Of a DNA stretch of 64,000 nucleotides, positions 1,546 to 63,799 are shown piece after piece. Position 1 is the stretch's first letter. Every line of letters begins with the position of its first letter. The stretch is from Oikopleura dioica (Eukaryota > Animalia > Chordata), in assembly GCA_907165135.1 (NCBI GenBank), contig OU015567.1, positions 10,168,001 to 10,232,000 of the forward strand, written 5' to 3'. Under the pieces are notes generated by a model. The model worked only from the letters and a program-made list of their open reading frames with translations, was not told where the DNA came from and did no database searches. The position numbers were made by a program, and so were the translations under genes.

Positions 1546-4433
1546 GAAAGAAAATTACAGCTATCTCGTGTATTGAAAACGTGACAATAATAATAAGAAC
1601 AAAAAATTAGCCTCTTGTGCTCGCCTCAAAATCACAGCTCCTCCAAAAATGAGCAGCACCGTATTCAAGCATTATAAATAGAATTTGTAGCGATTTCCGA
1701 AAAAAACAGCGAAAACTGATTTTCACGACGCTACATGTTTCGGCTAGTCAAGTTAGTCGAAAATTTTGGTGGCGGCGAAAACTCTTGACCGCATCTATCC
1801 GGAAAGAGGCTGGCTTCGGAGGAGTGCTATTAATTAGATGAAGAAAAATGAACGGACATTCCCAGGCTATGTATACCGCGCCGAATAGAACCTTTTCGGA
1901 GGAGGTGGAGGAATAGGGGAGCGGCCCTTGATAATCTCCTACCGCGGAAGATCTTACAAGGGGCGGTTTACTCATAACACGACTACGGGTTTATTGGGGG
2001 TAACTGTCCCAATCTATATAAGAAGCGTGTTTAGCATTTTTAGACATTTTGCATTTTGGCTTCTTCTGGAACCATTCCTTTATCTCGTTTAACAACTGGC
2101 AGGTGGCGCATCACTGAACAAACAAATTAAGCTTCAGTAAGGATGAATTGAATGTGGCCAGCCTGGCAAGTGTGTTTTTCCACCCAAGTCTGATGACGCT
2201 CGAAATGCGACAAATCTGAGAGATTGGAAGAGCAACACACTTGTGCCAGCTTTCGCCGCTGACTCGTGGCTCAATTAGGCAATCAACTGACGATCTCTCT
2301 TGCTCAAATCACCGGCAGCGCGAAAATTACAGGATTTTGAAAAAGACTAAATTCAAAGTTCAAAATCAGCGCTTTTCAAACTCGAGTTCGGCAATTTGAA
2401 GATTAAGTAAATCGATAAGGAAGTAGACTGGTTTAACTTTCGTGGAAAGCGACTCACTTTACAGAAAAGAGACGAAAATTTTAGAAAAGAAAAAAAGGAC
2501 GTAAAAATGCGCGAAATTGTTTGAAACAATTAATGAATTGAGAGGCCACAGCTTGGTGAAAATGCGGGCTCAGACCCTTAGTATTAAATTTAATCTGAGT
2601 TGTTCCTTTCAATTTAGACTTTTATGCTAAAGAATTATGCCGAGAGGTCAACTAAATTTGCAATGGATTTTATTTAAGAACCCATAAAAATTTTAAAACA
2701 AAATAAAACAATTGAGAAGATCCCATAAAATCCAAATAGCAAACCCCTAACTGTAAAATTGAGGAGTCGACTTAGTTGGGTTAAACTAGCCAAAACGGTG
2801 GATAATTATAGATCGCTTCATTGTTAAGCACACGACCATTACAAAATCCCCAGACCACATGGGAGAAAGCCGATGCGGTCGGATGTCTGCGCTGTCACTC
2901 AGGAAGTCACTCCTCGTAATTGAAGGACTTTGACTCGCGTTATCCATGCGAGTGAGAATAATCCTTATCTTCATGTCTTGTTTCTATATCTTTTCTGTTC
3001 CCTGATAATAACTTTTCTACTGGTTGTAATTACTAATTATCCTACTCGGCCACGTGGGCAGAAAATATCGTCGTTGATTCCAAGTGAAAAAGATTTATTT
3101 TGTACTTACGTGAAATAAAAACCTAAAGTTGAGTTGAATCGAAAAGTTCCATCAGCTCGATAAGAAAAAAGCAAGAATTGTTAGAAGATATCAAACCTTG
3201 ATGAAGCCACAACTGGTCACCGCAACCAGAGTTGCCCAAATAAACCGCTCCGGTTATTAACCCACGTGGTGCCGTCAGACGGCTGCGGGTTAAGAATTTT
3301 AAGATTCCGGCCCACTTCAACTTAGAGTGTTGGATGTTTTATTATTATGGTATTATTTCGAATTCCAGAAAAAGAAATTTGGGTCTTATTGCAAGTATTT
3401 CTGATTATCAAAAAAAAATGAAATAATATTTTTAGAAAAGAAGAAAAATGAACTTTCACGCGTCTAAGAACAAAACCAACTAACAACCCTAAAAAGTCAT
3501 TTCAACCCTTCACCGAAAATTATATGCTAATGAGGCTCAAGCTAACGCCCTTAGAAGAGCTTCAAATCTACCCCTACCCTTTCCCACGCTTCCAGCGCTT
3601 TTGTTGTTCTCTCGTGACAGCAAATTAGGGAATTCGCGGTTCACAAATATGCGCCCGACCCGCGCTGGAAGAGTGACCCTTTCACGGAAATTGCATTTTT
3701 TGGAGGAGCTCTTAGGATTCTTGCTTTGAGAGTGTCTGTGTCAGAAAGAGAGTCCAGGTCAGAAAGAGGTCGTGGCGAGAGGCATGGAGATTTGTTGGTC
3801 TTTTTGAATTTTTAACCCATGCGCGTAACTTGACCATTTTTTTGGCAAAACTCGGTTTGTATTCATTTGTTATTTTTTAATTATATCTTGACTAAAATTC
3901 TACCTAAAAAGCGAGCTTTTTTGCTTGATTGCCAAAATATTGGTTGGTTAACGCGCATGGGTTAATGAAAGTATTCCAGTTTTGTTTGAGGTTTTCTCAT
4001 ATTGAGCTTTTATGTACTTTTGGTTTTTTTAATCATTTTCGGAGAATACTGGTTTTGTTAAACAAGTGCCTGAGAAAGGAGCCATCGCGGAGCCACATTG
4101 AATTCCTCTGGATGTACTGCGGCGAGACGGTGATTGCGATTTCTTTTCCGCCACACGTGACATTCACGTCAGTTCCAATTCGCGGCACTTCAATCGAGCG
4201 CTGTTCCACACTTTTACATAGATACGAAAATTGTTCAAAATTGATTCGTTTGCATTCTTTTAAACGGCCCTATCTCCTCAAAATTCTTAAGGGTATCGAG
4301 ACGTTTTTCGAAAAATTTTAAGTTCAGATAATTTTACACCAAATGATAGTAATCCTCTATAATACAGTCAAATAGAAAGCAGATTAAGGGGATTTCAAAA
4401 GTAACTGTTCTTTTTGGTACGTTTTTGCTTTAA

Positions 4434-8560: not shown

Positions 8561-9098
8561 TCATTTTTCAAGAGTAATATTCCATCGAACATGTAAATTC
8601 CCATATCGTTTAAATTCAACAACACCATTTTCCGATCGCAAGTTGTGCTCCGATTTGTCGACTTTTCCATTACTGTGGTTGATGTCATTCGCATGCGCTT
8701 TGAATCTAACTCCCTCCCCTAGAAATAAACATTTTCTTTCGTTTGATGTCTTTACCATTTTTAGTAATTTTCAGCTTCCAAGTCTTGTCCCATTTATCCC
8801 CTGTCCAGCTTTTGAAATGCGTGAGCGTCCATTCACCTTCTGTTACTTCAAAATTTTGACCAGCTCCGTGGACCTCGAATTTCATATTGAAGTGAATGAA
8901 GCCAGCTTCCATCGCATTCAGAATCCGGCGGATGGCTCTTTCGTTGTGGGATTCTCGCACTGATCTCGCGTCGTTTTCAAAATAGTGGCCGAAGCCGGTT
9001 TTCCAGTAGTGAGGCCCGAAAGATAGAAGAATCTCCATTTTATTCTTATTGATGAGATCGAGTTCATGTTGCTCATCTGGAAACGCCTCTCGATTCAT
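8561..9098 (-). CDS. Hypothetical two-exon protein
   Basis: The open frame 9098-~8800 and a second frame ~8720-8561 (GEGVRFKAHANDINH...VRWNITLEK*) are separated by a short AT-rich intron-like gap. No family recognised. Confidence 0.45.
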
Positions 9099-33288: not shown

Positions 33289-33529
33289 TGTAAGGAGTCT
33301 GCTAAACTGCCTTTTCCCACTGGAAGAATGCCTGCTAATCTCTAAGGACAACAAGGAAGAGTCGGTAGTAGAGTAATCGTTGCTGTATATTTTGTAAAGA
33401 AAAGTTGGAAATAAATAACGAGTTGCTCGGAGGAGGTAAAAGTTACGAATGCCACTTCTGATCGAGCTCGACCGGAGTTGCGCTCGATCAGATAATGATA
33501 ACGTGGGCGAGAGTCTAGCAAACCCTATA
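33289..33529 (-). repeat. 3' LTR
   Basis: 240/241 identical to 37269-37509. On the element strand it reads TATAGGG...CTTACA. Confidence 0.97.
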
Positions 33530-33537
33530 CTCCCCCT
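33530..33537 (-). promoter_or_regulatory. Polypurine tract
   Basis: AGGGGGAG directly abuts the 3' LTR on the minus strand. Confidence 0.85.
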
Positions 33538-33697
33538 GAGACTTGAGCATATGATAAAAATAGTGGCAGGAATAGACTTTGACGCATCTAATGAACAGGA
33601 TCTTGAGAAAGTGCTACATTCTGGATTCGATTCTGCGTTAAAAAACCACGTGGGAGAAAAAGCATGAATCTAGACCAAAATATGTAGAGTAGCTCTT

Positions 33698-34345
33698 CTA
33701 GCGATGGCGAGCGGGCGAATCGGCTGGATCAGGGATTGTGCTCAATAAATGGTCGGCGACGGTACTGTAGTGATAAAGTCTAACCTTTTCAGGCCCCGGT
33801 CGATGATACAGAGCGAGCTCTGTTGGACCTGAAGGGGCAGCATTTTTCGCATAGTTGTAGCTCTTGCTGCTGGAGCTGTTGAAGTTCATCGGTTGAACTG
33901 GGGTTTTCACTCGAGATGATGTCCGCGGCGCTTTCGAATGCAGTTCGACAACTGTACTGTTCGGAGAAGCTTCGGGTCGAGTACGCTTTTGACGTCGTTT
34001 TTGCACTGGAGTGGGTCTCTTTTGTGATTCGACATTTTCTGACGTATTATTTAAATCTGCCACATCACGCGACTTGACATCTAAGTTCTGGGTAGATAGA
34101 GCTTGAGAATGGGCTGAATCGAAAATGGTGCTTTCCCCGGTGGTTCCACCAGTAGTATCATCCGCGACATATTTCACAGGCGAGATATCTGGGTTGATAG
34201 TCTGAACCTGAGACCTTTTGACGGGCGTATAACTCCTCTCCCCCTGAGACGATGAACCCGATTGAGTTGATTTCTTTGGAGGTGGAATTCGCGGTTGAGC
34301 TATTTGATGAGCCTTCGACTTGATAGTCGAGGTGAGGTGAGGAAA
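33698..34345 (-). CDS. Retroelement ORF3: Ser/Thr/Pro-rich tail, no ATG; overlaps the ORF2 end in the -1 frame
   Basis: The frame is stop-free from 34345 to 33698 (FPHLTSTIKSK...SPARHR*). No integrase motifs (HHCC, DDE) are visible. Confidence 0.45.
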   Translation of the reverse strand, partial: FPHLTSTIKSKAHQIAQPRIPPPKKSTQSGSSSQGERSYTPVKRSQVQTINPDISPVKYVADDTTGGTTGESTIFDSAHSQALSTQNLDVKSRDVADLNNTSENVESQKRPTPVQKRRQKRTRPEASPNSTVVELHSKAPRTSSRVKTPVQPMNFNSSSSKSYNYAKNAAPSGPTELALYHRPGPEKVRLYHYSTVADHLLSTIPDPADSPARHR

Positions 34346-36150
34346 CTACGGTCCATTTCGAAATCGTCGATGAATCTCAAATTGTCGAGTCGTCGAGAAG
34401 CGTGACCACTGTGCTCGGTGATGCTGGCCAAAGCTAAATCCGGCATCTTACCGTTTTGTAGAAAGAGCAGATGGCGACGATCGGAATGCAGGTAGAAGTG
34501 GCGTCCATTTAGCATCATCTCCGGACACTCGCATCCCCATTCAATCGCAAAGTGTTCTTTGTGAGTGTTGGAATCCGCGGCTAACCAATATGCCCATTTT
34601 GGAGGGCGAGCCAATCGCATTTGTAGCTCCTGTAGCGCGAGATTCGCGTTTTGTGGCCATTTGGAAACGGCTGTGTCAGTCGCCGAGTTTCTGACTGAGT
34701 AAAGTGGCACAATGCGATGAGAAAAGCTGTCTGTTGCGTTCTTTTCTCCCACTGTCGTTTCAAAAAATGGTCGAACCCAAAGAGGCTCAATTACCGACGT
34801 GAGTTCCTTTAAGTTCCCTGGGGGTTCCATCATCCGCGGTTTCAACAGATTTTCTGGGCCTGGCCTAGCCTCAGACTGCGCGGTGTCTCGGCCAAGGAGT
34901 CTCGCCGGTGGGGGTCCTTTTGTTTCCGCCCCGAACGGAAAATTTCCCGGTTGACCATTCCGAAGCAGCGAAGCCTCATCTTCCTGTTGTGACTTGTCGC
35001 TATTGTCCGGAAATGTGATGTTTAGCACCTCTTTTACTCGCTTCGCTGGGCATCCTTGGTCACGGGAGTTTGGTGATGCAGCTAACGTAAACTTTTTGTT
35101 GTCCGCGGTAACGTTTGTAGCTTTAGATCGCTCATTGTGGGTGATTCGGAAACATTTGACTCGACTTTGAGCCACACCCTTGAGTTTTATCGTTTGGGAC
35201 TTTGTCTTCGTAACAGAGTTGTCGAAATATAACGTAAGAGTTCTTAACTTGTTGTCGACGGCGAGTCCGTCAATCGCCGCGTTGTCGAGAACGTCTCTGC
35301 CCAGTAGATTCGGAAAACCGGCGGGCGTAACCACCAGTTCGACCTTGATTTGTGGTCCATCGTTGAAGGAGAACCGGCAATCCAGTAAACCAAGTGGCCT
35401 TTGCGGCGGTGACTTGGGGTCGAATCCAGAAATGTCGAATGGGCAGGGTTGAAGTTGTTTGAGGATTTGGTCGGGTACGCAATCGACTGAAACTGTAGAA
35501 GAAGCAGCTCCACTGTCCACCTCCATCATGGTGTCAAAACTGTTAGAGCCCACCATGATGGTTGTAGCTGCGAAGTTGGACTTGATTGAATTCTTCGACT
35601 TCAGTTGATAGTATTGGAAGGGTTCCAGTTGTTCTTCAATTGTCGTTTTCATCACTTTCCTTTCGGATTTGTCGTCGCAGTCGGTATCTTCGCTATTCGA
35701 GTTTCCGTCTTTCGGGCTCTTCTTTCGCCTGTTCCATCTACCGCCTTTCTTCTTTTGGAAGTTGACGGAGACAGAGGTATCAACTCTGTTTTGGATGGTT
35801 TGTTGTGCCAGACGAGCAAGTTCCTTTATTGAGAAGACGTTGCTCAGGGAAGGAGAAATCTGGTTGAAAACTTCAGGCTCGTTGGATCGTAACTGAAGAT
35901 AGAGCAGCATGGCTTCTATGACTTCGAAGACATCATCGGCTTCTAGGTCTCGATTTTTGTGAGATTTGAAAGCGGCTTTAATCGCCCCTCTCGCCTCTCT
36001 CATCTTTTTCTGGACTTCCGCGGCGTAGTGCGCGGTTGGCTTCGTAGGGTCGAATTCGATGTCCCATACTTCGGATAAGGAGAGGAAGAAGTGGCTTCTA
36101 TCGCCGAAATTTTTTCTAGAATTGTCTTTGCGTCTTCCCAGGTTGAGCAC
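34300..36150 (-). CDS. Retroelement ORF2: Gag C-part, aspartic protease, degenerate RT-connection and RNase H remnants
   Basis: The protease motifs MEVDSGAASS and NLLGRDVL are present. EPPGNLKELTSVI, FSHRIVPLYSV, WPQNANLALQELQMRLARPPKWAY and HFAIEWGCE...MLNGRHFYLHSDRRHLLFL resemble gypsy RT thumb/connection and RNase H consensus segments. Confidence 0.85.
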   Translation of the reverse strand: MLNLGRRKDNSRKNFGDRSHFFLSLSEVWDIEFDPTKPTAHYAAEVQKKMREARGAIKAAFKSHKNRDLEADDVFEVIEAMLLYLQLRSNEPEVFNQISPSLSNVFSIKELARLAQQTIQNRVDTSVSVNFQKKKGGRWNRRKKSPKDGNSNSEDTDCDDKSERKVMKTTIEEQLEPFQYYQLKSKNSIKSNFAATTIMVGSNSFDTMMEVDSGAASSTVSVDCVPDQILKQLQPCPFDISGFDPKSPPQRPLGLLDCRFSFNDGPQIKVELVVTPAGFPNLLGRDVLDNAAIDGLAVDNKLRTLTLYFDNSVTKTKSQTIKLKGVAQSRVKCFRITHNERSKATNVTADNKKFTLAASPNSRDQGCPAKRVKEVLNITFPDNSDKSQQEDEASLLRNGQPGNFPFGAETKGPPPARLLGRDTAQSEARPGPENLLKPRMMEPPGNLKELTSVIEPLWVRPFFETTVGEKNATDSFSHRIVPLYSVRNSATDTAVSKWPQNANLALQELQMRLARPPKWAYWLAADSNTHKEHFAIEWGCECPEMMLNGRHFYLHSDRRHLLFLQNGKMPDLALASITEHSGHASRRLDNLRFIDDFEMDRSFLTSPRLSSRRLIK

Positions 36151-36620
36151 TGGAGGATTTCTTCACCGATCTGTCGTTCGATGGAGATATCGAGGTGTGA
36201 GTAAACGCAGTTCAAGAATGGTTGTAGTCTGCTTGCGTGACCTTCGACGTGTGCTTTGTAAAATATTGAAAGTCGGCCCAGGAAGTTCGTAAATTCTGCG
36301 TGTGAACTTCCATCGAGTTTGGAGGTGTCTGTCATGTATCGTGTAAATGTGGCTGTGATGTGAGCTTCTTCTCGATAATCCGCGGTTGTTTGGTGACCTT
36401 GGGCGAAAGACTGGGAACGGTTGAGTTCGTGTTTGCAGAGGGTTCCCATCATTTGGTTTATCCGGTCCCGTTCCAAGATGTTTTTGTTGATAATCGGACG
36501 CAAGACTGGCTCTTTCGCCGGGTCAGCTTGTATCTGACTCTCAAGGTCGCGGTTCATGTCCAGAAGTAGTGAGATTCGGACGCCCGCTTCGTATATTGAT
36601 CCCGGATCGTTGTCGGTCAT
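36000..36620 (-). CDS. Retroelement ORF1: Gag N-terminal part
   Basis: A 206-aa ATG ORF ~650 nt after the PBS. It overlaps ORF2 at the A6 run (36110-36115). Confidence 0.75.
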   Translation of the reverse strand: MTDNDPGSIYEAGVRISLLLDMNRDLESQIQADPAKEPVLRPIINKNILERDRINQMMGTLCKHELNRSQSFAQGHQTTADYREEAHITATFTRYMTDTSKLDGSSHAEFTNFLGRLSIFYKAHVEGHASRLQPFLNCVYSHLDISIERQIGEEILQCSTWEDAKTILEKISAIEATSSSPYPKYGTSNSTLRSQPRTTPRKSRKR

Positions 36621-37254
36621 AGCTCAAAATGTGCGAAGTCACGAGATCTTGATCAAAAGTTTTACCTTTTGGGCCCTCAGAAATAGCCAGCAACTTTTTA
36701 CGGTTACTGACAATGACGCTGAGGTGCCGATGTACGCGTTGTCGATCTCGGAGTTCTTGTCTTCTCTTGGCAAATTTTCTCTTGCTGGAAGTGTTTTCGT
36801 AAAATTCTCTGTCTTCTGTGTTTTTGTTTTAGTTTCCGCGGCTTTGTGTCTTCTGATTATTTTCAGAGTGAGTGGTGTTTCGTTTTCGCGTGTGTAGGTG
36901 GGCGTTGCGTCACTTGTCCGCGGCGGGGCCTAGGCGGCGGCGTGGTGGCGCGCGCGAGGTGTTGGAGGTGTGTGTGTGGTGAGCGAAGGAGTGGCGCGGG
37001 CGTGTTCCGTTGCTCGGTGCGTGGGTTTGTTGTTTTATTCTCGCGGCGATTTCGGATGGCGGTGATCAGGGCCAACGGAATTTTTGTGCGCGGCGAGAAT
37101 TTCTGTTTTCGTAATTTTCGTAATTTTCTCTTGAAACGGCGTTTCTAGCGGTTCCAAGGAAAATTAGGAGTTGATTCGTAATCCGCGGTCTCTGATTGGT
37201 CGAAACGGCGAAATTTACTCGTCGGAGAAGTCGTCACTTTTCCAGAATCTGGGT

Positions 37255-37267
37255 CTTCTTGACACCA
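37255..37267 (-). promoter_or_regulatory. Primer-binding site, probably tRNA-Leu
   Basis: TGGTGTCAAGAAG starts 1 nt inside the 5' LTR end. It resembles the complement of eukaryotic tRNA-Leu 3' ends (...UCUGACACCA). Confidence 0.75.
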
Positions 37268-37268
37268 C

Positions 37269-37509
37269 TGTAAGAAGTCTGCTAAACTGCCTTTTCCCAC
37301 TGGAAGAATGCCTGCTAATCTCTAAGGACAACAAGGAAGAGTCGGTAGTAGAGTAATCGTTGCTGTATATTTTGTAAAGAAAAGTTGGAAATAAATAACG
37401 AGTTGCTCGGAGGAGGTAAAAGTTACGAATGCCACTTCTGATCGAGCTCGACCGGAGTTGCGCTCGATCAGATAATGATAACGTGGGCGAGAGTCTAGCA
37501 AACCCTATA
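37269..37509 (-). repeat. 5' LTR
   Basis: Direct repeat of 33289-33529. Confidence 0.97.
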
Positions 37510-48720: not shown

Positions 48721-51700
48721 TTTGCAGCACTTTCGCCCAGAAAACTCAATACACTTTGGAAAAGGGATCGACTGGTGATATCAGCTGTTCCTTCCCCGGC
48801 GATGTGACGCTGATCAACTTCAAACGCGACAAAGAAGTTCTATGGATCAAGTACGGCGATCAGAACCCTTTCTCAACGAGTAACAACCGCTTTCAATCAA
48901 TCAGCTCCAGGCACGGGTCACGTGACCTCGCCGAAAAGGTCAATTTGAGGCAATGAGCTTACGCCATGTAATCAGAGAGATAATTAAAAAATATAAGCTC
49001 GCCAGGGTGAAAGATTAAGAAGCCGAGTATAGAAAATGAGATCGATACAGCTGGGCAACATCAGACATGCCCTGTGGCCGGAAAAAGGTCACGGGCAATT
49101 AAGGCACACTATCTTTGCCAAGGTCTTTTCACAGTTTCTTTACGGTAGTTTTCCTCCAAAAATGAACTTACGGCGACTTGCTTGAAGAATGAGGACTTTT
49201 TAATCAGGATGAAAAGTCCTCATTCTTCAATGATCTCGCTGAAAAACCGTAAAGGTTCATAGCTGTCCTAAAGACTTTTAATGTGGAGCAATGATCAAAC
49301 AGTGTTCCTAATCAAAAATTCTGTTACCGTAAGCTACAGTAATCGATAGTCATTAGTTGATTAAAACGGCGGCTGCGCTCAAGGCAAGCACTCGGAAGAG
49401 AGGCATTAAGCTCATCGCCGCGTATCGAGCGGCTCATCCGAGCGGAGCCGTTTAATTTATAAAAAGATCTTCTTGTATTTATTCTAAATCTGAAATATAA
49501 AATAATCTGAATCTATTTTTTGATTCAAAGATGGGCGGATAAAATCGGCTGGGCAAAGTGCCCATCTTCCACTTTTAGAAGAAAAAATATAAATATAGAA
49601 AAATATGCCGAGCGTATGGGCTGTATATGTAGCATACGGGCGAGTGGATGATCCTTTTCTTAAGGATCTACACTTCGATTATAGCAGACTCTGCTCTCAG
49701 ACGAGGTAGCACCTGGCTAAGGGTGCGCCTCCCCACCGTTCTCATGGAACATAATGTTCATATTACAGTAGCTCAGGAAAGCGAAAAACATATGTTCGTA
49801 AATTTCTCTTTCGGTTTTCTTTTCATCTGCGATTAAAGAAAAAAACTTGGGCACTTAGATGCTTGACAATAAAATCGTTTGTAATCCGGCGATAACCAAA
49901 TATTGTGACCTCAAAACAAGCTCCAGTTCGAAACTCGACTTACGTATCAACTCGGTGCAGCTGGAGGATGAAAATGTTTATGCTTGTGAAAATCAGCGTG
50001 GAGAAGGATACGATATTCATTTAACTGTCACAGGTACTTCGAATTCTCGATCTTTAAAAAATCCTTCAAGGGACTGACTAGAGCTTGAATAGAATTCTAA
50101 GCTGCAGCTGGGTTTATCCTCCCTGTAGTAGAATATTCAGCTGTTGGGTAACAGAATTTTCTACCAAAATTCGATTCAACTTCTGGCCTAAGTTTATGTC
50201 AGGCGGCGAGTGAATTAAAATAATATTTGGCGAAAAGTGAAAACTAGCTTCTGGCGTTGAACACCGCATCAGCTGGCAGCTTTGCGTTAGTTCCAATCAC
50301 GTGGAAAAAAAAGAAGGGACTGACCGGTTAGCAGCAGGTGCGGCGACGACCGGGAGGGACCTTTGACAACGTGTTTAGTGTCAACTTAGGCTGTAATGGG
50401 TTATCTTATGTAACTAATTTGTGAGAAAAAATATCATGCTTGATAAGAAGCTGCCCAGATTTTTAAAGCCCTTATCTTTGGTGCATTGAATTTTGGTTAT
50501 AAACAGCATTTTGAGAAAAAGTCAGGGAAAGGGATGGATAAACAAACTGTGATATTTATACTATCCTTCCGCAAGAGTGGGATTGTGTTAACCGCTGCTC
50601 TAGAAGTTTTGCGGGTAAATAGACGCGTTCTAGCGCTGATAGAATTGCTTCAAAGATTGATGAAAATTTGGAATGCCACGAGAGTTTAATGGCTGAAAAC
50701 TTTAATAAGGGGATCCACATCAATCACCAATTTTCTTGTGCACATTTCTTCTAGTGCTAAGATAGTGACGCCCTTATTTTTTGCTTTGTGAAGCCTTCTT
50801 CGCCATCATTATTCAATTTTCATAAGTCAGTTTTAAATCCCTTCCCTCTAAAATATCCTAAAGCGCAACGATCCTTGATTTACGATACGAAAGGATTTGC
50901 TATGATTATCTTGGTGATAAGCAAAGATGGTGACTTAAAATTTAAGTGAAACCGGAGGTGACAATAGAAGAGGCATCCTCACTCGTTGTGAATAGTGGAG
51001 AGGAGTTGCAAATCGGAACTTGTCGCGCTTCCGGAGCCAAACCGCGCCCGCAAATCCAGTGGATCGACGATACGGGAAGAGTTTACCCGGCAAATGAAGA
51101 TGCTACGTAAGTTATTCAGAATAACTTATTCTGCGAAAAGGGGCTTGCTAGGGAGTGTTTCGAAGAAAAAGGGTTGAAAGAGCAACTTTGGAAAGGAAAA
51201 AAGTTTGCTGTAACCAGGATTCGAACCTGGGTTGTCACGGCCACAACGTGAAGTACTAACCACTATACGATTACAGCTCTGACAGGCGACCTCAAAAAAT
51301 CATTTATCAAAAAATTTTACGAGGTCACTAATTTTTCTGTTTGAGTACTTTTTTGCGTCAACTTTACAGATTTTTTCTGATTGCCCAATTAAAAAATTCC
51401 AACCTCAATTAATCATGTTCCAACACAGTCGATCGCCGATATCTGTGACTCACGGGGTCAGTTTTTCAAGTATCGCTGGTTTTTCGGCTGTACCGCAGGT
51501 AGCAGATTCAGATAGGACACGCTGTGGTCGATGTTGGTTTAGTGAATCTCCAAATTGCTGGATTCGGAACACACTTTCCTTATCATTTCCTTATCAGCTC
51601 TGCTCATTACCTCAAATGTCCGAAATTCAACTATAATTTTAGCAAAAAAGGGAAGCTCATCGACGTTGAGAGCACCTTAATCATCCCCAATTCAAGCAAG

Positions 51701-62937: not shown

Positions 62938-63019
62938 CGCTGCGAACAGGATTCGAACCTGCGCGGGGAGACCCCAAGAGATTTCTAATCTCTCGCCTTA
63001 ACCACTCGGCCATCGCAGC
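62938..63019 (-). tRNA. tRNA-Ser(AGA): tRNA-Ser (AGA)
   Basis: An 82-nt cloverleaf with a long variable arm, anticodon loop TTAGAAA, and a T-run terminator downstream. Confidence 0.97.
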
Positions 63020-63717: not shown

Positions 63718-63799
63718 GCTGCGATGGCCGAGTGGTTAAGGCGAGAGATTAGAAATCTCTTGGGGTCTCCCCGCGCAGGTTCGAATCCTGTTCGCAGCG
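63718..63799 (+). tRNA. tRNA-Ser(AGA): tRNA-Ser (AGA), identical inverted copy
   Basis: Identical to the reverse complement of 62938-63019. Confidence 0.97.

What the first reader, a model, noticed from the sequence alone, without database searches (positions are those of the whole stretch)
33289..37509. Recently mobilised LTR element encoding Gag-protease plus an in-frame 'ghost' Pol, with no RT core and no integrase
Seen: the LTRs are 240/241 identical, PBS and PPT are intact, and the protease has an intact DSG motif. About 250 further codons stay open and retain recognisable but heavily diverged RT thumb/connection and RNase H segments. The YxDD palm, the RNase H DAS catalytic segment and the whole integrase are missing. 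Simple recent deletion would leave near-consensus fragments, whereas these are diverged yet stop-free. Inference: an old, self-maintaining non-autonomous lineage that makes its own particles and protease and borrows RT/IN in trans. The dead Pol remnant may serve as an adaptor to recruit or heterodimerise with helper RT, like a satellite or defective-interfering retroelement system.
Basis: partly seen in the sequence, partly recalled or inferred. Interest (0 to 1): 0.8.

Follow-up and report, generated by a model that had tools for sequence, protein, structure and literature searches.

The report
Helper-dependent Gag-protease jumping gene
This is a recently inserted copy of a small retrovirus-like jumping gene of the tunicate Oikopleura dioica that still makes its own capsid and protease but has lost its copying and integration enzymes; such helper-dependent elements are known, and the leftover enzyme fragments no longer have a conserved sequence although their reading frame has stayed open longer than chance predicts.

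Summary
Window 33289-37509, minus strand, is a 4,221-nt Ty3/gypsy-type (Tor-like) LTR element of Oikopleura dioica OKI2018_I69. It has 241-nt LTRs with one mismatch, a PBS, a PPT, Gag and a protease with DSG. After the protease come remnants of the RT C-terminus, the RNase H C-half and the integrase C-terminal tail. The RT palm, the RNase H DAS segment and the integrase core are absent.

The assembly holds four full copies with the same deletions, each at its own site with its own target duplication. No autonomous element shares their LTR.

Gag-protease is under strong purifying selection among the copies (dN/dS 0.12). The remnant is not (0.97). Against autonomous relatives it changed about six times faster, and it lost 23 of 95 positions that are invariant in three autonomous families.

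So the [quoted passage not shown] reading is supported. The "adaptor" reading is not.

One oddity remains. All lineage-level deletions are in frame, and no stop is shared, where about six are expected (P about 0.002). This suggests selection for translation through the remnant, or retention of cis signals (an internal PPT and a 3'UTR motif), rather than a protein function.

The closest known kind is the plant "semi-autonomous" GAG-Pro elements. The scan noted the same kind of element on other DNA of this genome (s1-319406).

The parts
37269..37509 (-). 5' LTR (241 nt)
   Evidence: Direct repeat with 33289-33529, one mismatch. It starts TATAGGGTT and ends TTACA.
33289..33529 (-). 3' LTR (241 nt)
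   Evidence: The flanks carry ATC on both sides. The other three copies have perfect 4-bp target duplications.
37251..37267 (-). Primer-binding-site-like stretch; the primer tRNA was not identified
   Evidence: It starts with TGG one base after the LTR. It is 17/18 identical to the same position in autonomous family S (L072) and shares 8 of its first 9 bases with family R.
36621..37250 (-). Untranslated leader
   Evidence: In this genome it is found only in the four copies plus one 82% fragment.
36000..36620 (-). Gag N-half ORF (206 aa; the last ~36 aa are out of frame)
   Evidence: Identical in copies A, B and C. It is 39-41% identical to family R Gag and 67% to family S Gag.
36106..36116 (-). 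G-A6 run where copies A and B lack one base, which splits Gag
   Evidence: A -1 slip at this run would restore the protein read in copies C and D. This is an inference and was not tested.
35605..36150 (-). Gag C-half, the start of ORF2
   Evidence: Aligns to Gag of families R and S in the same frame as the protease.
35185..35604 (-). Aspartic protease (DSG at 35497-35526, LLGRD at 35281-35307)
   Evidence: 56-59% identical to family S. Omega among copies is 0.03-0.16.
34906..35184 (-). Linker after the protease and the first residues of RT, up to deletion junction 1
   Evidence: Omega 0.39.
34588..34905 (-). RT C-terminal remnant (FLG motif, thumb, connection); about 205 aa of fingers/palm are deleted just upstream
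   Evidence: BLASTP to family R aa 786-895, E 5e-27. Relative-rate test.
34432..34587 (-). RNase H C-half remnant; the DAS segment (about 30 aa) and a further 11 aa are deleted
   Evidence: Pfam RT_RNaseH profile positions 49-90 only, below the cut-off.
33698..34431 (-). Pol C-terminal tail, downstream of the deleted integrase core. In this copy it shifts frame at 34343 and so appears as a separate 159-215 aa ORF.
   Evidence: 50% identical to the last 206 aa of family S Pol (P0006) and 37% to family R at about aa 1501-1567. The shared stop is at 33698-33700.
34238..34248 (-). Internal copy of the PPT motif (candidate central PPT)
   Evidence: The same 11 nt as the 3' PPT. It is conserved at the homologous site in family S and in the Bergen element.
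33622..33666 (-). Conserved 3'UTR motif
   Evidence: It is near-identical in this element, in family S (L067) and in the Bergen element (L069), although Gag is only about 40% identical between those families.
33530..33540 (-). 3' polypurine tract abutting the LTR

Best explanation
This is one copy of a helper-dependent ('semi-autonomous') Ty3/gypsy-type LTR retrotransposon lineage of Oikopleura dioica (Okinawa).

Origin. The lineage descends from a single-ORF Gag-Pol element. In-frame deletions removed the RT fingers/palm, the RNase H N-part and the integrase core.

What it encodes. It still encodes Gag and the protease, which selection maintains. It must obtain RT and integrase in trans from an autonomous element whose enzymes accept its PBS, PPT and LTR ends.

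The leftover Pol codons. As protein sequence they are junk, with dN/dS about 1. They are probably retained for two reasons. First, they carry cis-acting nucleic-acid signals: an internal PPT copy, a 3'UTR motif and the 3' PPT. Second, variants that keep ribosomes translating to near the 3' end did better, for example by escaping decay triggered by a long 3'UTR.

Shown here: the structure, the copies, the selection on Gag-PR, the lack of sequence constraint on the remnant, and frame preservation beyond chance. Inferred: trans-mobilisation, the identity of the helper, and the reason for frame preservation.
For: Copies. Four full copies share the same junctions and each has its own 4-bp target duplication. 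LTR pairs differ by 0-2 bases. The LTR and the leader occur nowhere else in the assembly except in one 84% fragment.

Domain map. It rests on family R (1726-aa ORF; Pfam RVT_1, RT_RNaseH), family S (P0006: RT_RNaseH, rve) and the Bergen element L069.

Selection among the copies.
- Gag-PR: 68 synonymous, 28 non-synonymous, omega 0.12, p=4e-24 against 1.
- Remnant: 16 synonymous, 51 non-synonymous, omega 0.97, p=0.89.
- Fisher test between the two: p=5e-9.

Relative rates, element against S.
- Gag 20 against 25; thumb+RNH 36 against 4 (p=2e-7); tail 18 against 5.
- 23 of 95 positions that are invariant in S, R and O are changed in all four copies.
- Codon ML, non-synonymous changes on the element branch against the S branch: Gag 99 against 86; thumb+RNH 90 against 14; tail 100 against 40.

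Frame. No stop and no frameshift in the remnant is shared between copies, where 6.4 stops are expected (P=0.0017). At least 4-6 lineage-specific deletions are all in frame, whereas 0 of 9 indels in dead family R copies are multiples of 3.

Cis signals. They are shared with autonomous family S: PBS 17/18, PPT, and the first 9 nt of the LTR. The internal PPT and the 3'UTR motif are conserved across families.
Against: - No helper with matching LTRs is present in this assembly, so trans-mobilisation is inferred only.
- There is no expression evidence. The two RNA runs laid gave zero reads and are no test.
- Gag diversity (dS 0.2-0.3) far exceeds the remnant's divergence (0.04), and the copies are mosaics. 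Part of the purifying-selection signal on Gag could therefore have been imported by recombination from unsampled, possibly autonomous, relatives.
- Copies A and B share a frameshift inside Gag yet inserted separately. A copy's own Gag is therefore not strictly needed in cis.
- Synonymous sites between the element and family S are saturated, so the branch omegas and the age of the deletion are rough.
- With 36 changes, weak constraint on thumb+RNH (omega about 0.4-0.7) is not excluded.
Confidence: 0.78

Rival explanations
1. The ghost Pol is a functional protein adaptor. Its thumb/connection and RNase H remnants bind or heterodimerise with the helper's RT and recruit it into the element's own particles.
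For: The frame has stayed open through about 150 extra non-synonymous changes and several deletions. The retained RT part is the thumb/connection, which forms dimer contacts in some retroviral RTs (general knowledge, not tested here). Omega for thumb+RNH alone is 0.68, with a wide interval.
Against: Omega is 0.97 over the remnant and significantly above Gag-PR. 23 of 95 positions that are invariant in three autonomous families are replaced. Each copy carries a private lesion in the remnant. The amino-acid replacement rate is six times that of the autonomous sister. An interface would be expected to keep a conserved patch, and none is seen.
Confidence: 0.06
2. The frame is kept open because the Pol C-terminal tail still has a protein function, for example a basic nuclear-targeting stretch or the integrase C-terminal motif. 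The RT/RNase H remnant is then only an in-frame spacer.
For: The start of the tail (the HAS..L..LK motif and IFPHLT) and its last ~45 residues are well conserved between the element, S and O. The long-branch omega of the tail is about 0.47, against 0.37 in S.
Against: Among the copies the tail has 5 synonymous against 26 non-synonymous changes, omega 1.6. Conservation of the tail's end continues at the same level into non-coding 3'UTR. The conserved SSQGER stretch coincides with the internal PPT, which points to nucleotide-level constraint. Three of the four copies are interrupted within or before the tail.
Confidence: 0.12
3. This is ordinary decay. A deletion derivative was copied a few times by chance. 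Frame openness and in-frame deletions are coincidence plus ascertainment, since the reader picked the element because its frame is open.
For: There are only four copies. Recent omega is about 1. Every copy has a lesion. Earlier scan notes list many other defective LTR elements in this genome, so some open frames are expected by chance.
Against: P is about 0.002 for no shared stop and 0.001-0.01 for all deletions being in frame. Gag-PR evolved at the same rate as in the autonomous sister while the remnant ran six times faster. That requires long persistence after the deletion.
Confidence: 0.12

Closest known systems
'Semi-autonomous' GAG-Pro gypsy elements of wheat and barley (RLG_Sabrina_SA, RLG_WHAM), cross-mobilised by RLG_Wilma/BAGY2 (PMC9744471)
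   Same: They are LTR elements whose whole population encodes Gag plus protease but no RT or integrase. They persist for a long time beside a sequence-diverged autonomous partner.
   Different: The plant families have thousands of copies and no reported in-frame Pol remnant. Here there are four copies in a 64-Mb animal genome, a single Gag-PR-remnant reading frame, and no identified partner in the assembly.
Tor elements of Oikopleura dioica (PMC4402516, PMC8008620)
   Same: Same host. Ty3/gypsy-like order of domains. Recent, polymorphic insertions. Homology to O. dioica Gag-Pol elements at 38-44%.
   Different: The described Tor elements are autonomous (gag, pol, often env). The words 'non-autonomous' and 'deletion' do not occur in PMC4402516. 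I could not compare with named Tor1-4 sequences.
In-frame internally deleted defective genomes: mouse IAP I-delta-1 elements, poliovirus and coronavirus DI RNAs ('translation but not the encoded sequence'). Cited from my own knowledge, not checked in the library.
   Same: Helper-dependent deletion derivatives in which the deletions preserve the reading frame, and the translated junk need not be conserved.
   Different: Those are RNA viruses or a mammalian ERV. No interference with the helper is shown here, and the reason for frame preservation is untested.
TR-GAG, LARD and TRIM non-autonomous LTR elements of plants (from my own knowledge)
   Same: Non-autonomous LTR retrotransposons mobilised in trans.
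   Different: LARD and TRIM have no coding capacity and TR-GAG has gag only. This element keeps Gag and an apparently intact protease.

Membership tests
Ty3/gypsy-type LTR retrotransposon (Oikopleura Tor-like clade) | Paired LTRs flanked by a short target-site duplication | tested here: met
   241-nt LTRs. Perfect 4-bp duplications in copies B, C and D, and ATC in this copy.
Ty3/gypsy-type LTR retrotransposon (Oikopleura Tor-like clade) | PBS next to the 5' LTR and PPT next to the 3' LTR | tested here: inconclusive
   The PPT is clear. The PBS-like TGG stretch is 17/18 identical to family S. No matching tRNA 3' end was found.
Ty3/gypsy-type LTR retrotransposon (Oikopleura Tor-like clade) | Domain order Gag-PR-RT-RNase H-IN, with homology to autonomous O. 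dioica elements | tested here: met
   The remnants lie in that order. BLASTP to family R gives E 1e-126, and to the Bergen element L069 E 1e-134.
Autonomous LTR retrotransposon or endogenous retrovirus | Complete RT (YxDD palm), RNase H catalytic core and integrase core | tested here: not met
   No RVT_1 or rve hit. Alignments show these segments deleted in all four copies.
Semi-autonomous GAG-Pro LTR elements (Sabrina_SA/WHAM type) | The whole population encodes Gag+protease and lacks RT/IN | tested here: met
   4 of 4 full copies. No other LTR or leader match in the assembly.
Semi-autonomous GAG-Pro LTR elements (Sabrina_SA/WHAM type) | The Gag-Pro ORF is maintained by selection | tested here: met
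   Omega 0.12. The Gag rate equals that of the autonomous sister. Caveat: Gag is split by a frameshift in this copy and in copy B.
Semi-autonomous GAG-Pro LTR elements (Sabrina_SA/WHAM type) | An identifiable autonomous partner that supplies RT/IN | tested here: inconclusive
   Family S matches the PBS, PPT and LTR end but is seen only in marine metagenome contigs. Family R is abundant and intact in the genome but shares only short terminal motifs.
LARD / TRIM | No protein-coding capacity | tested here: not met
   Gag-PR is coding and under selection.
Defective-interfering-like in-frame deletion derivative | Deletions preserve the frame; the derivative depends on and interferes with a helper | tested here: inconclusive
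   Frame preservation is met. Dependence is inferred. Interference is not testable with these tools.

The most novel reading that the evidence does not exclude
A long-lived Gag-protease satellite retroelement in a chordate, in which selection keeps a dead Pol remnant translatable but not conserved ('translation, not sequence'). The likely reason is that a single-ORF genomic RNA with an early stop is degraded or poorly packaged. If other Tor-derived deletion lineages of this genome show the same pattern (earlier notes s1-319406 and s1-400343 describe in-frame fusions), this would be a general rule shaping defective retroelements with one long ORF.
Probability: 0.4. Interest if true: 0.6.

Novelty: new member of a known kind. 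Interest (0 to 1): 0.42.

Why it matters
The finding shows that the very compact O. dioica genome hosts helper-dependent retroelements that keep their own capsid and protease genes. So far that arrangement has mainly been described in large plant genomes.

It also gives a clean natural contrast within one reading frame. Gag-protease is under strong constraint, while the adjoining Pol remnant is free to change but is not interrupted. If that frame preservation is real, it makes a testable point about how translation, RNA surveillance and packaging shape defective retroviral genomes.

For annotation: two copies are currently annotated as host genes (YSR.g17182 and PAR.g11215).

Tried and rejected
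- Primer tRNA. A genome pattern search for the PBS complement gave only the four copies plus chance-level hits. The tRNAs in the window (His, two Ser) do not match. The Rfam tRNA scan of the genome returned places without sequence.
The 3' halves of family R and the S-like fragment at C5:5489376-5492648 were therefore seen only as coordinates.
- RNA evidence. Runs X11 and X12 gave zero reads. They are probably from another O. dioica lineage and are no test.
- The scan of JGI metagenome contigs with the remnant protein found nothing.
- The look-up of encoding contigs for P0091 found nothing on record.
- A search of the phage collection with the insertion in copy C was pointless and negative.
- The branch-specific codon ML could not separate omega from branch length in Gag and in thumb+RNH, because synonymous sites are saturated (branch length hit its bound). 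I used only the estimated numbers of non-synonymous changes.
- Rejected: a programmed -1 frameshift as the native Gag/Pol boundary. The shift lies in the middle of Gag, and copies C and D and families R, S and O read straight through.
- Rejected: an env remnant as the identity of 'ORF3'. It is the shifted Pol tail.
- No binding prediction was run, because I do not claim binding.


Full report
WHAT IS THERE

Window 33289-37509 holds a 4,221-nt LTR element on the minus strand. The two 241-nt LTRs differ at one base. A TGG-initiated PBS-like stretch starts one base after the 5' LTR, and a purine tract abuts the 3' LTR.

The coding part reads as three pieces in this copy:
- a 206-aa Gag N-half (36620-36000);
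- a 616-620-aa frame (36150-34300) holding the Gag C-half, an aspartic protease with DSG and LLGRD, and about 290 further codons;
- a 159-215-aa frame (34345-33698).

Pfam sees no RT or integrase domain, only a sub-threshold piece of RT_RNaseH.

HOST AND COPIES

The genome has 64.28 Mb in 19 contigs. The only database protein that matches is an Oikopleura dioica OKI2018_I69 gene model, and the assembly statistics match PMC8008620.

The assembly holds four full-length copies, which I label:
- A, this window;
- B, C1:9.88 Mb;
- C, C1:4.32 Mb;
- D, C3:2.57 Mb, in the Y-specific scaffold.

The copies are 96-98% identical and have the same internal structure. Each has different flanks and its own target duplication (GTAG, AGGT, ATAG; ATC in this copy). 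LTR pairs differ by 0-2 bases.

LTR-only and leader-only searches find nothing else except one 82-90% fragment that ends after gag. There are no solo LTRs, and no autonomous element has these LTRs.

READING FRAMES

Copy D reads as one frame of 928 codons. The four copies share a terminal stop at codon 977.

- Copies A and B lack one base in an A run inside Gag: A6 in A and B, A7 in C, AAAAGAA in D.
- Copy A alone lacks one base at window 34343. That ends its ORF2 and turns the rest of the frame into 'ORF3'.
- Copy C has two private 1-nt losses.
- Copy B has one private 1-nt loss.
- Copy D has a private stop.

Three of the four private 1-nt losses sit in homopolymers of 3-5 bases. In a Nanopore-based assembly they could be errors. 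If so, the frames are even more intact than they appear.

ANATOMY AGAINST AUTONOMOUS RELATIVES

I used three autonomous relatives.

- Family R is in the same genome. The searches list about 40 copies. Twenty-five of them were aligned over about 3.9 kb, and eight compared pairwise to one reference copy are 98.4-100% identical. Many have an intact 1,726-aa single Gag-Pol ORF.
- Family S is known only from marine metagenome contigs (L067, L068, L070-L073). It has Gag, PR-RT and RNase H-integrase-tail. Its identity to the element is 67% in Gag, 56-59% in PR and 50% in the tail.
- Element O comes from the Bergen O. dioica assembly (L069).

Relative to these, the element has lost:
- about 205 aa of RT fingers/palm, between 'FPF.AE' and the FLG motif;
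- about 30 aa of RNase H including DAS, plus a further 11 aa;
- about 510 aa from the RNase H end through the integrase core;
- smaller pieces of the tail.

It retains the RT C-terminus (thumb/connection), the RNase H C-half and the last ~240 codons of Pol. All of these deletions are in frame.

SELECTION AMONG THE FOUR COPIES

- Gag-PR: 68 synonymous and 28 non-synonymous differences, omega 0.12, p=4e-24 against neutrality.
- Remnant plus tail: 16 synonymous and 51 non-synonymous, omega 0.97, p=0.89.
- The two regions differ at p=5e-9. Other frames show no coding signal.

LTR pairs within a copy differ by 0-0.8%, while the copies differ by 2-6%. Most differences therefore arose in replicating lineages, not after insertion.

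THE LONG BRANCH

The relative-rate tests use R or O as outgroup.
- Gag changed equally in the element and in S (20 against 25).
- PR changed no faster in the element (13 against 24).
- Thumb+RNase H has 36 element-specific against 4 S-specific replacements (p=2e-7).
- The tail has 18 against 5.

In thumb+RNase H, S and R are 72% identical, yet the element is only 41-49% identical to either. Twenty-three of 95 positions that are invariant in S, R and O are changed in all four copies.

A three- or four-taxon codon model puts about 90 non-synonymous changes on the element branch in 97 codons, against 14 for S. The same comparison gives 99 against 86 in Gag. Synonymous sites are saturated: third-position identity is 0.41-0.57. 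Ages are therefore rough, but constraint on the remnant was relaxed long before the present copies diverged.

One caveat applies. The copies are mosaics, with incompatible site patterns in blocks, and dS in gag (0.2-0.3) far exceeds remnant divergence (0.04). Gag segments have therefore been exchanged with unsampled relatives.

THE PUZZLE THAT REMAINS

If the excess changes were neutral, about 6.4 stop codons should have arisen in thumb+RNase H plus tail. None is shared by the copies (P=0.0017; 0.018 for thumb+RNase H alone).

At least four to six lineage-specific deletions are all multiples of three (P 0.012 to 0.001). In 25 family R copies, by contrast, 0 of 9 indels are multiples of three.

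So the frame, but not the sequence, appears to have been kept.

CIS SIGNALS

The tail contains an exact second copy of the 11-nt PPT motif (34238-34248). It is conserved at the homologous site in S and O, and the conserved peptide SSQGER is its translation.

A ~45-nt 3'UTR motif (33622-33666) is nearly identical in the element, S and O. Nucleotide identity to S stays at about 72% across the Pol stop into non-coding sequence.

Part of what looks like retained 'Pol' is therefore probably retained as cis-acting nucleic acid.

HELPER

The element's PBS (17/18), PPT and first nine LTR bases match family S. No S-type autonomous element is in this assembly. The best match is a 5'-truncated RT-IN-tail fragment at C5:5.49 Mb, 64-67% identical to S.

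Family R is the only abundant intact family. It shares only the terminal TAT.GGG and CA, and 8 of the first 9 PBS bases. The helper is not identified.

READS

Two DNA runs from other samples hold the element across all three junctions. Both alleles are present at 36111 and at 34340. Among the loose ends the tool listed there was none at a junction, which is where a full-length parent would show; four further loose ends were not listed. The RNA runs gave no reads and are no test.

MECHANISM

This is my best reading; the parts not listed as shown under Best explanation are inference.
1. The element is transcribed from its LTR.
2. Its Gag-PR polyprotein is made and forms or joins particles.
3. 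RT and integrase come from a co-expressed autonomous element that accepts its PBS, PPT and LTR ends.
4. Co-packaged relatives recombine, which gives the mosaics.
5. Integration makes 4-bp duplications.

The Pol remnant has no sequence-dependent protein role. It persists as a carrier of cis signals, and because in-frame variants of a single-ORF genomic RNA were favoured. One possible reason is that they avoid a long untranslated 3' region. That last point is hypothesis.

KNOWN KINDS AND NOVELTY

The arrangement matches the 'semi-autonomous' GAG-Pro gypsy elements of wheat and barley (PMC9744471). It resembles in-frame defective genomes of other retroelements and RNA viruses (from my own knowledge). 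The Tor paper I read does not mention non-autonomous derivatives. Earlier notes of this scan list the same kind of element, and other defective Tor derivatives, in this genome. I file it as a new member of a known kind, with one feature worth following up: frame preservation without sequence constraint.

LIMITS

- There are only four copies.
- The identity of the family S host is unknown.
- Synonymous saturation makes the branch estimates rough.
- Some private indels may be assembly errors.
- There are no expression data.

Broken codons were read as X or dropped.

Noticed in passing
L003:5653-6455 (copy C, 3' LTR): An insertion of about 800 nt with 17-nt terminal inverted repeats (starting CAGGGCTG) and an 8-bp target duplication (CTACTACC). 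It looks like a hAT-type MITE that landed inside the LTR of the oldest copy.
   Followed up: partly
window 33622-33666; L067:~3080-3125; L069:~8745-8790: A 3'UTR motif (CATGCTTTTTC ... TTTTTTAA.GCAGA) is nearly identical in three element families whose Gag proteins are only about 40% identical. It is probably a cis-acting signal of this clade.
   Followed up: partly
window 34238-34248; L067:2452; L069:8111: An internal copy of the PPT motif inside the Pol tail is conserved across families (candidate central PPT). The private frameshift of copy C is a G5-to-G4 change in this run.
   Followed up: partly
window 36106-36116: The 1-nt loss that splits Gag in copies A and B creates a G-A6 run. A -1 ribosomal or transcriptional slip there would restore exactly the protein of copies C and D.
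   Followed up: no
G000, e.g. C2:605773-611700 (L012), C5:10103916-10109615: Family R. The searches list about 40 copies. Eight compared over 3.9 kb are 98.4-100% identical to one reference copy. About 20 have an intact 1,726-aa single Gag-Pol frame, so the family was evidently active very recently. The LTR is about 256 nt and the PBS starts TGGTATCAGAG.
   Followed up: partly
G000:C5:5489376-5492648: A 1,110-codon open frame with RT C-half, RNase H, integrase and tail. It is 64-67% identical to metagenomic family S, with no Gag-PR detected upstream. It is the nearest RT/IN source to family S in this genome.
   Followed up: no
L004 (C3:2572080-2576306) and L002 (C1:9880113-9884339): Copies D and B are annotated as host protein-coding genes (YSR.g17182, 738 aa; PAR.g11215, 388 aa). 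Copy D lies on the Y-specific scaffold and is the most divergent copy, with gag 8.4% different.
   Followed up: partly
L069:2757-14574 (Bergen assembly FN653041.1): Two autonomous elements lie in tandem with a period of about 6,127 nt and share the LTR between them.
   Followed up: no
window 51206-51277, 62938-63019, 63718-63799: A tRNA-His gene, and two identical tRNA-Ser(AGA) genes on opposite strands about 700 nt apart.
   Followed up: no
L005 (C3:876707-878076): An older fragment of the same family, 82-90% identical. It holds a partial LTR, the leader and gag with a TAG stop, and ends where gag ends.
   Followed up: partly
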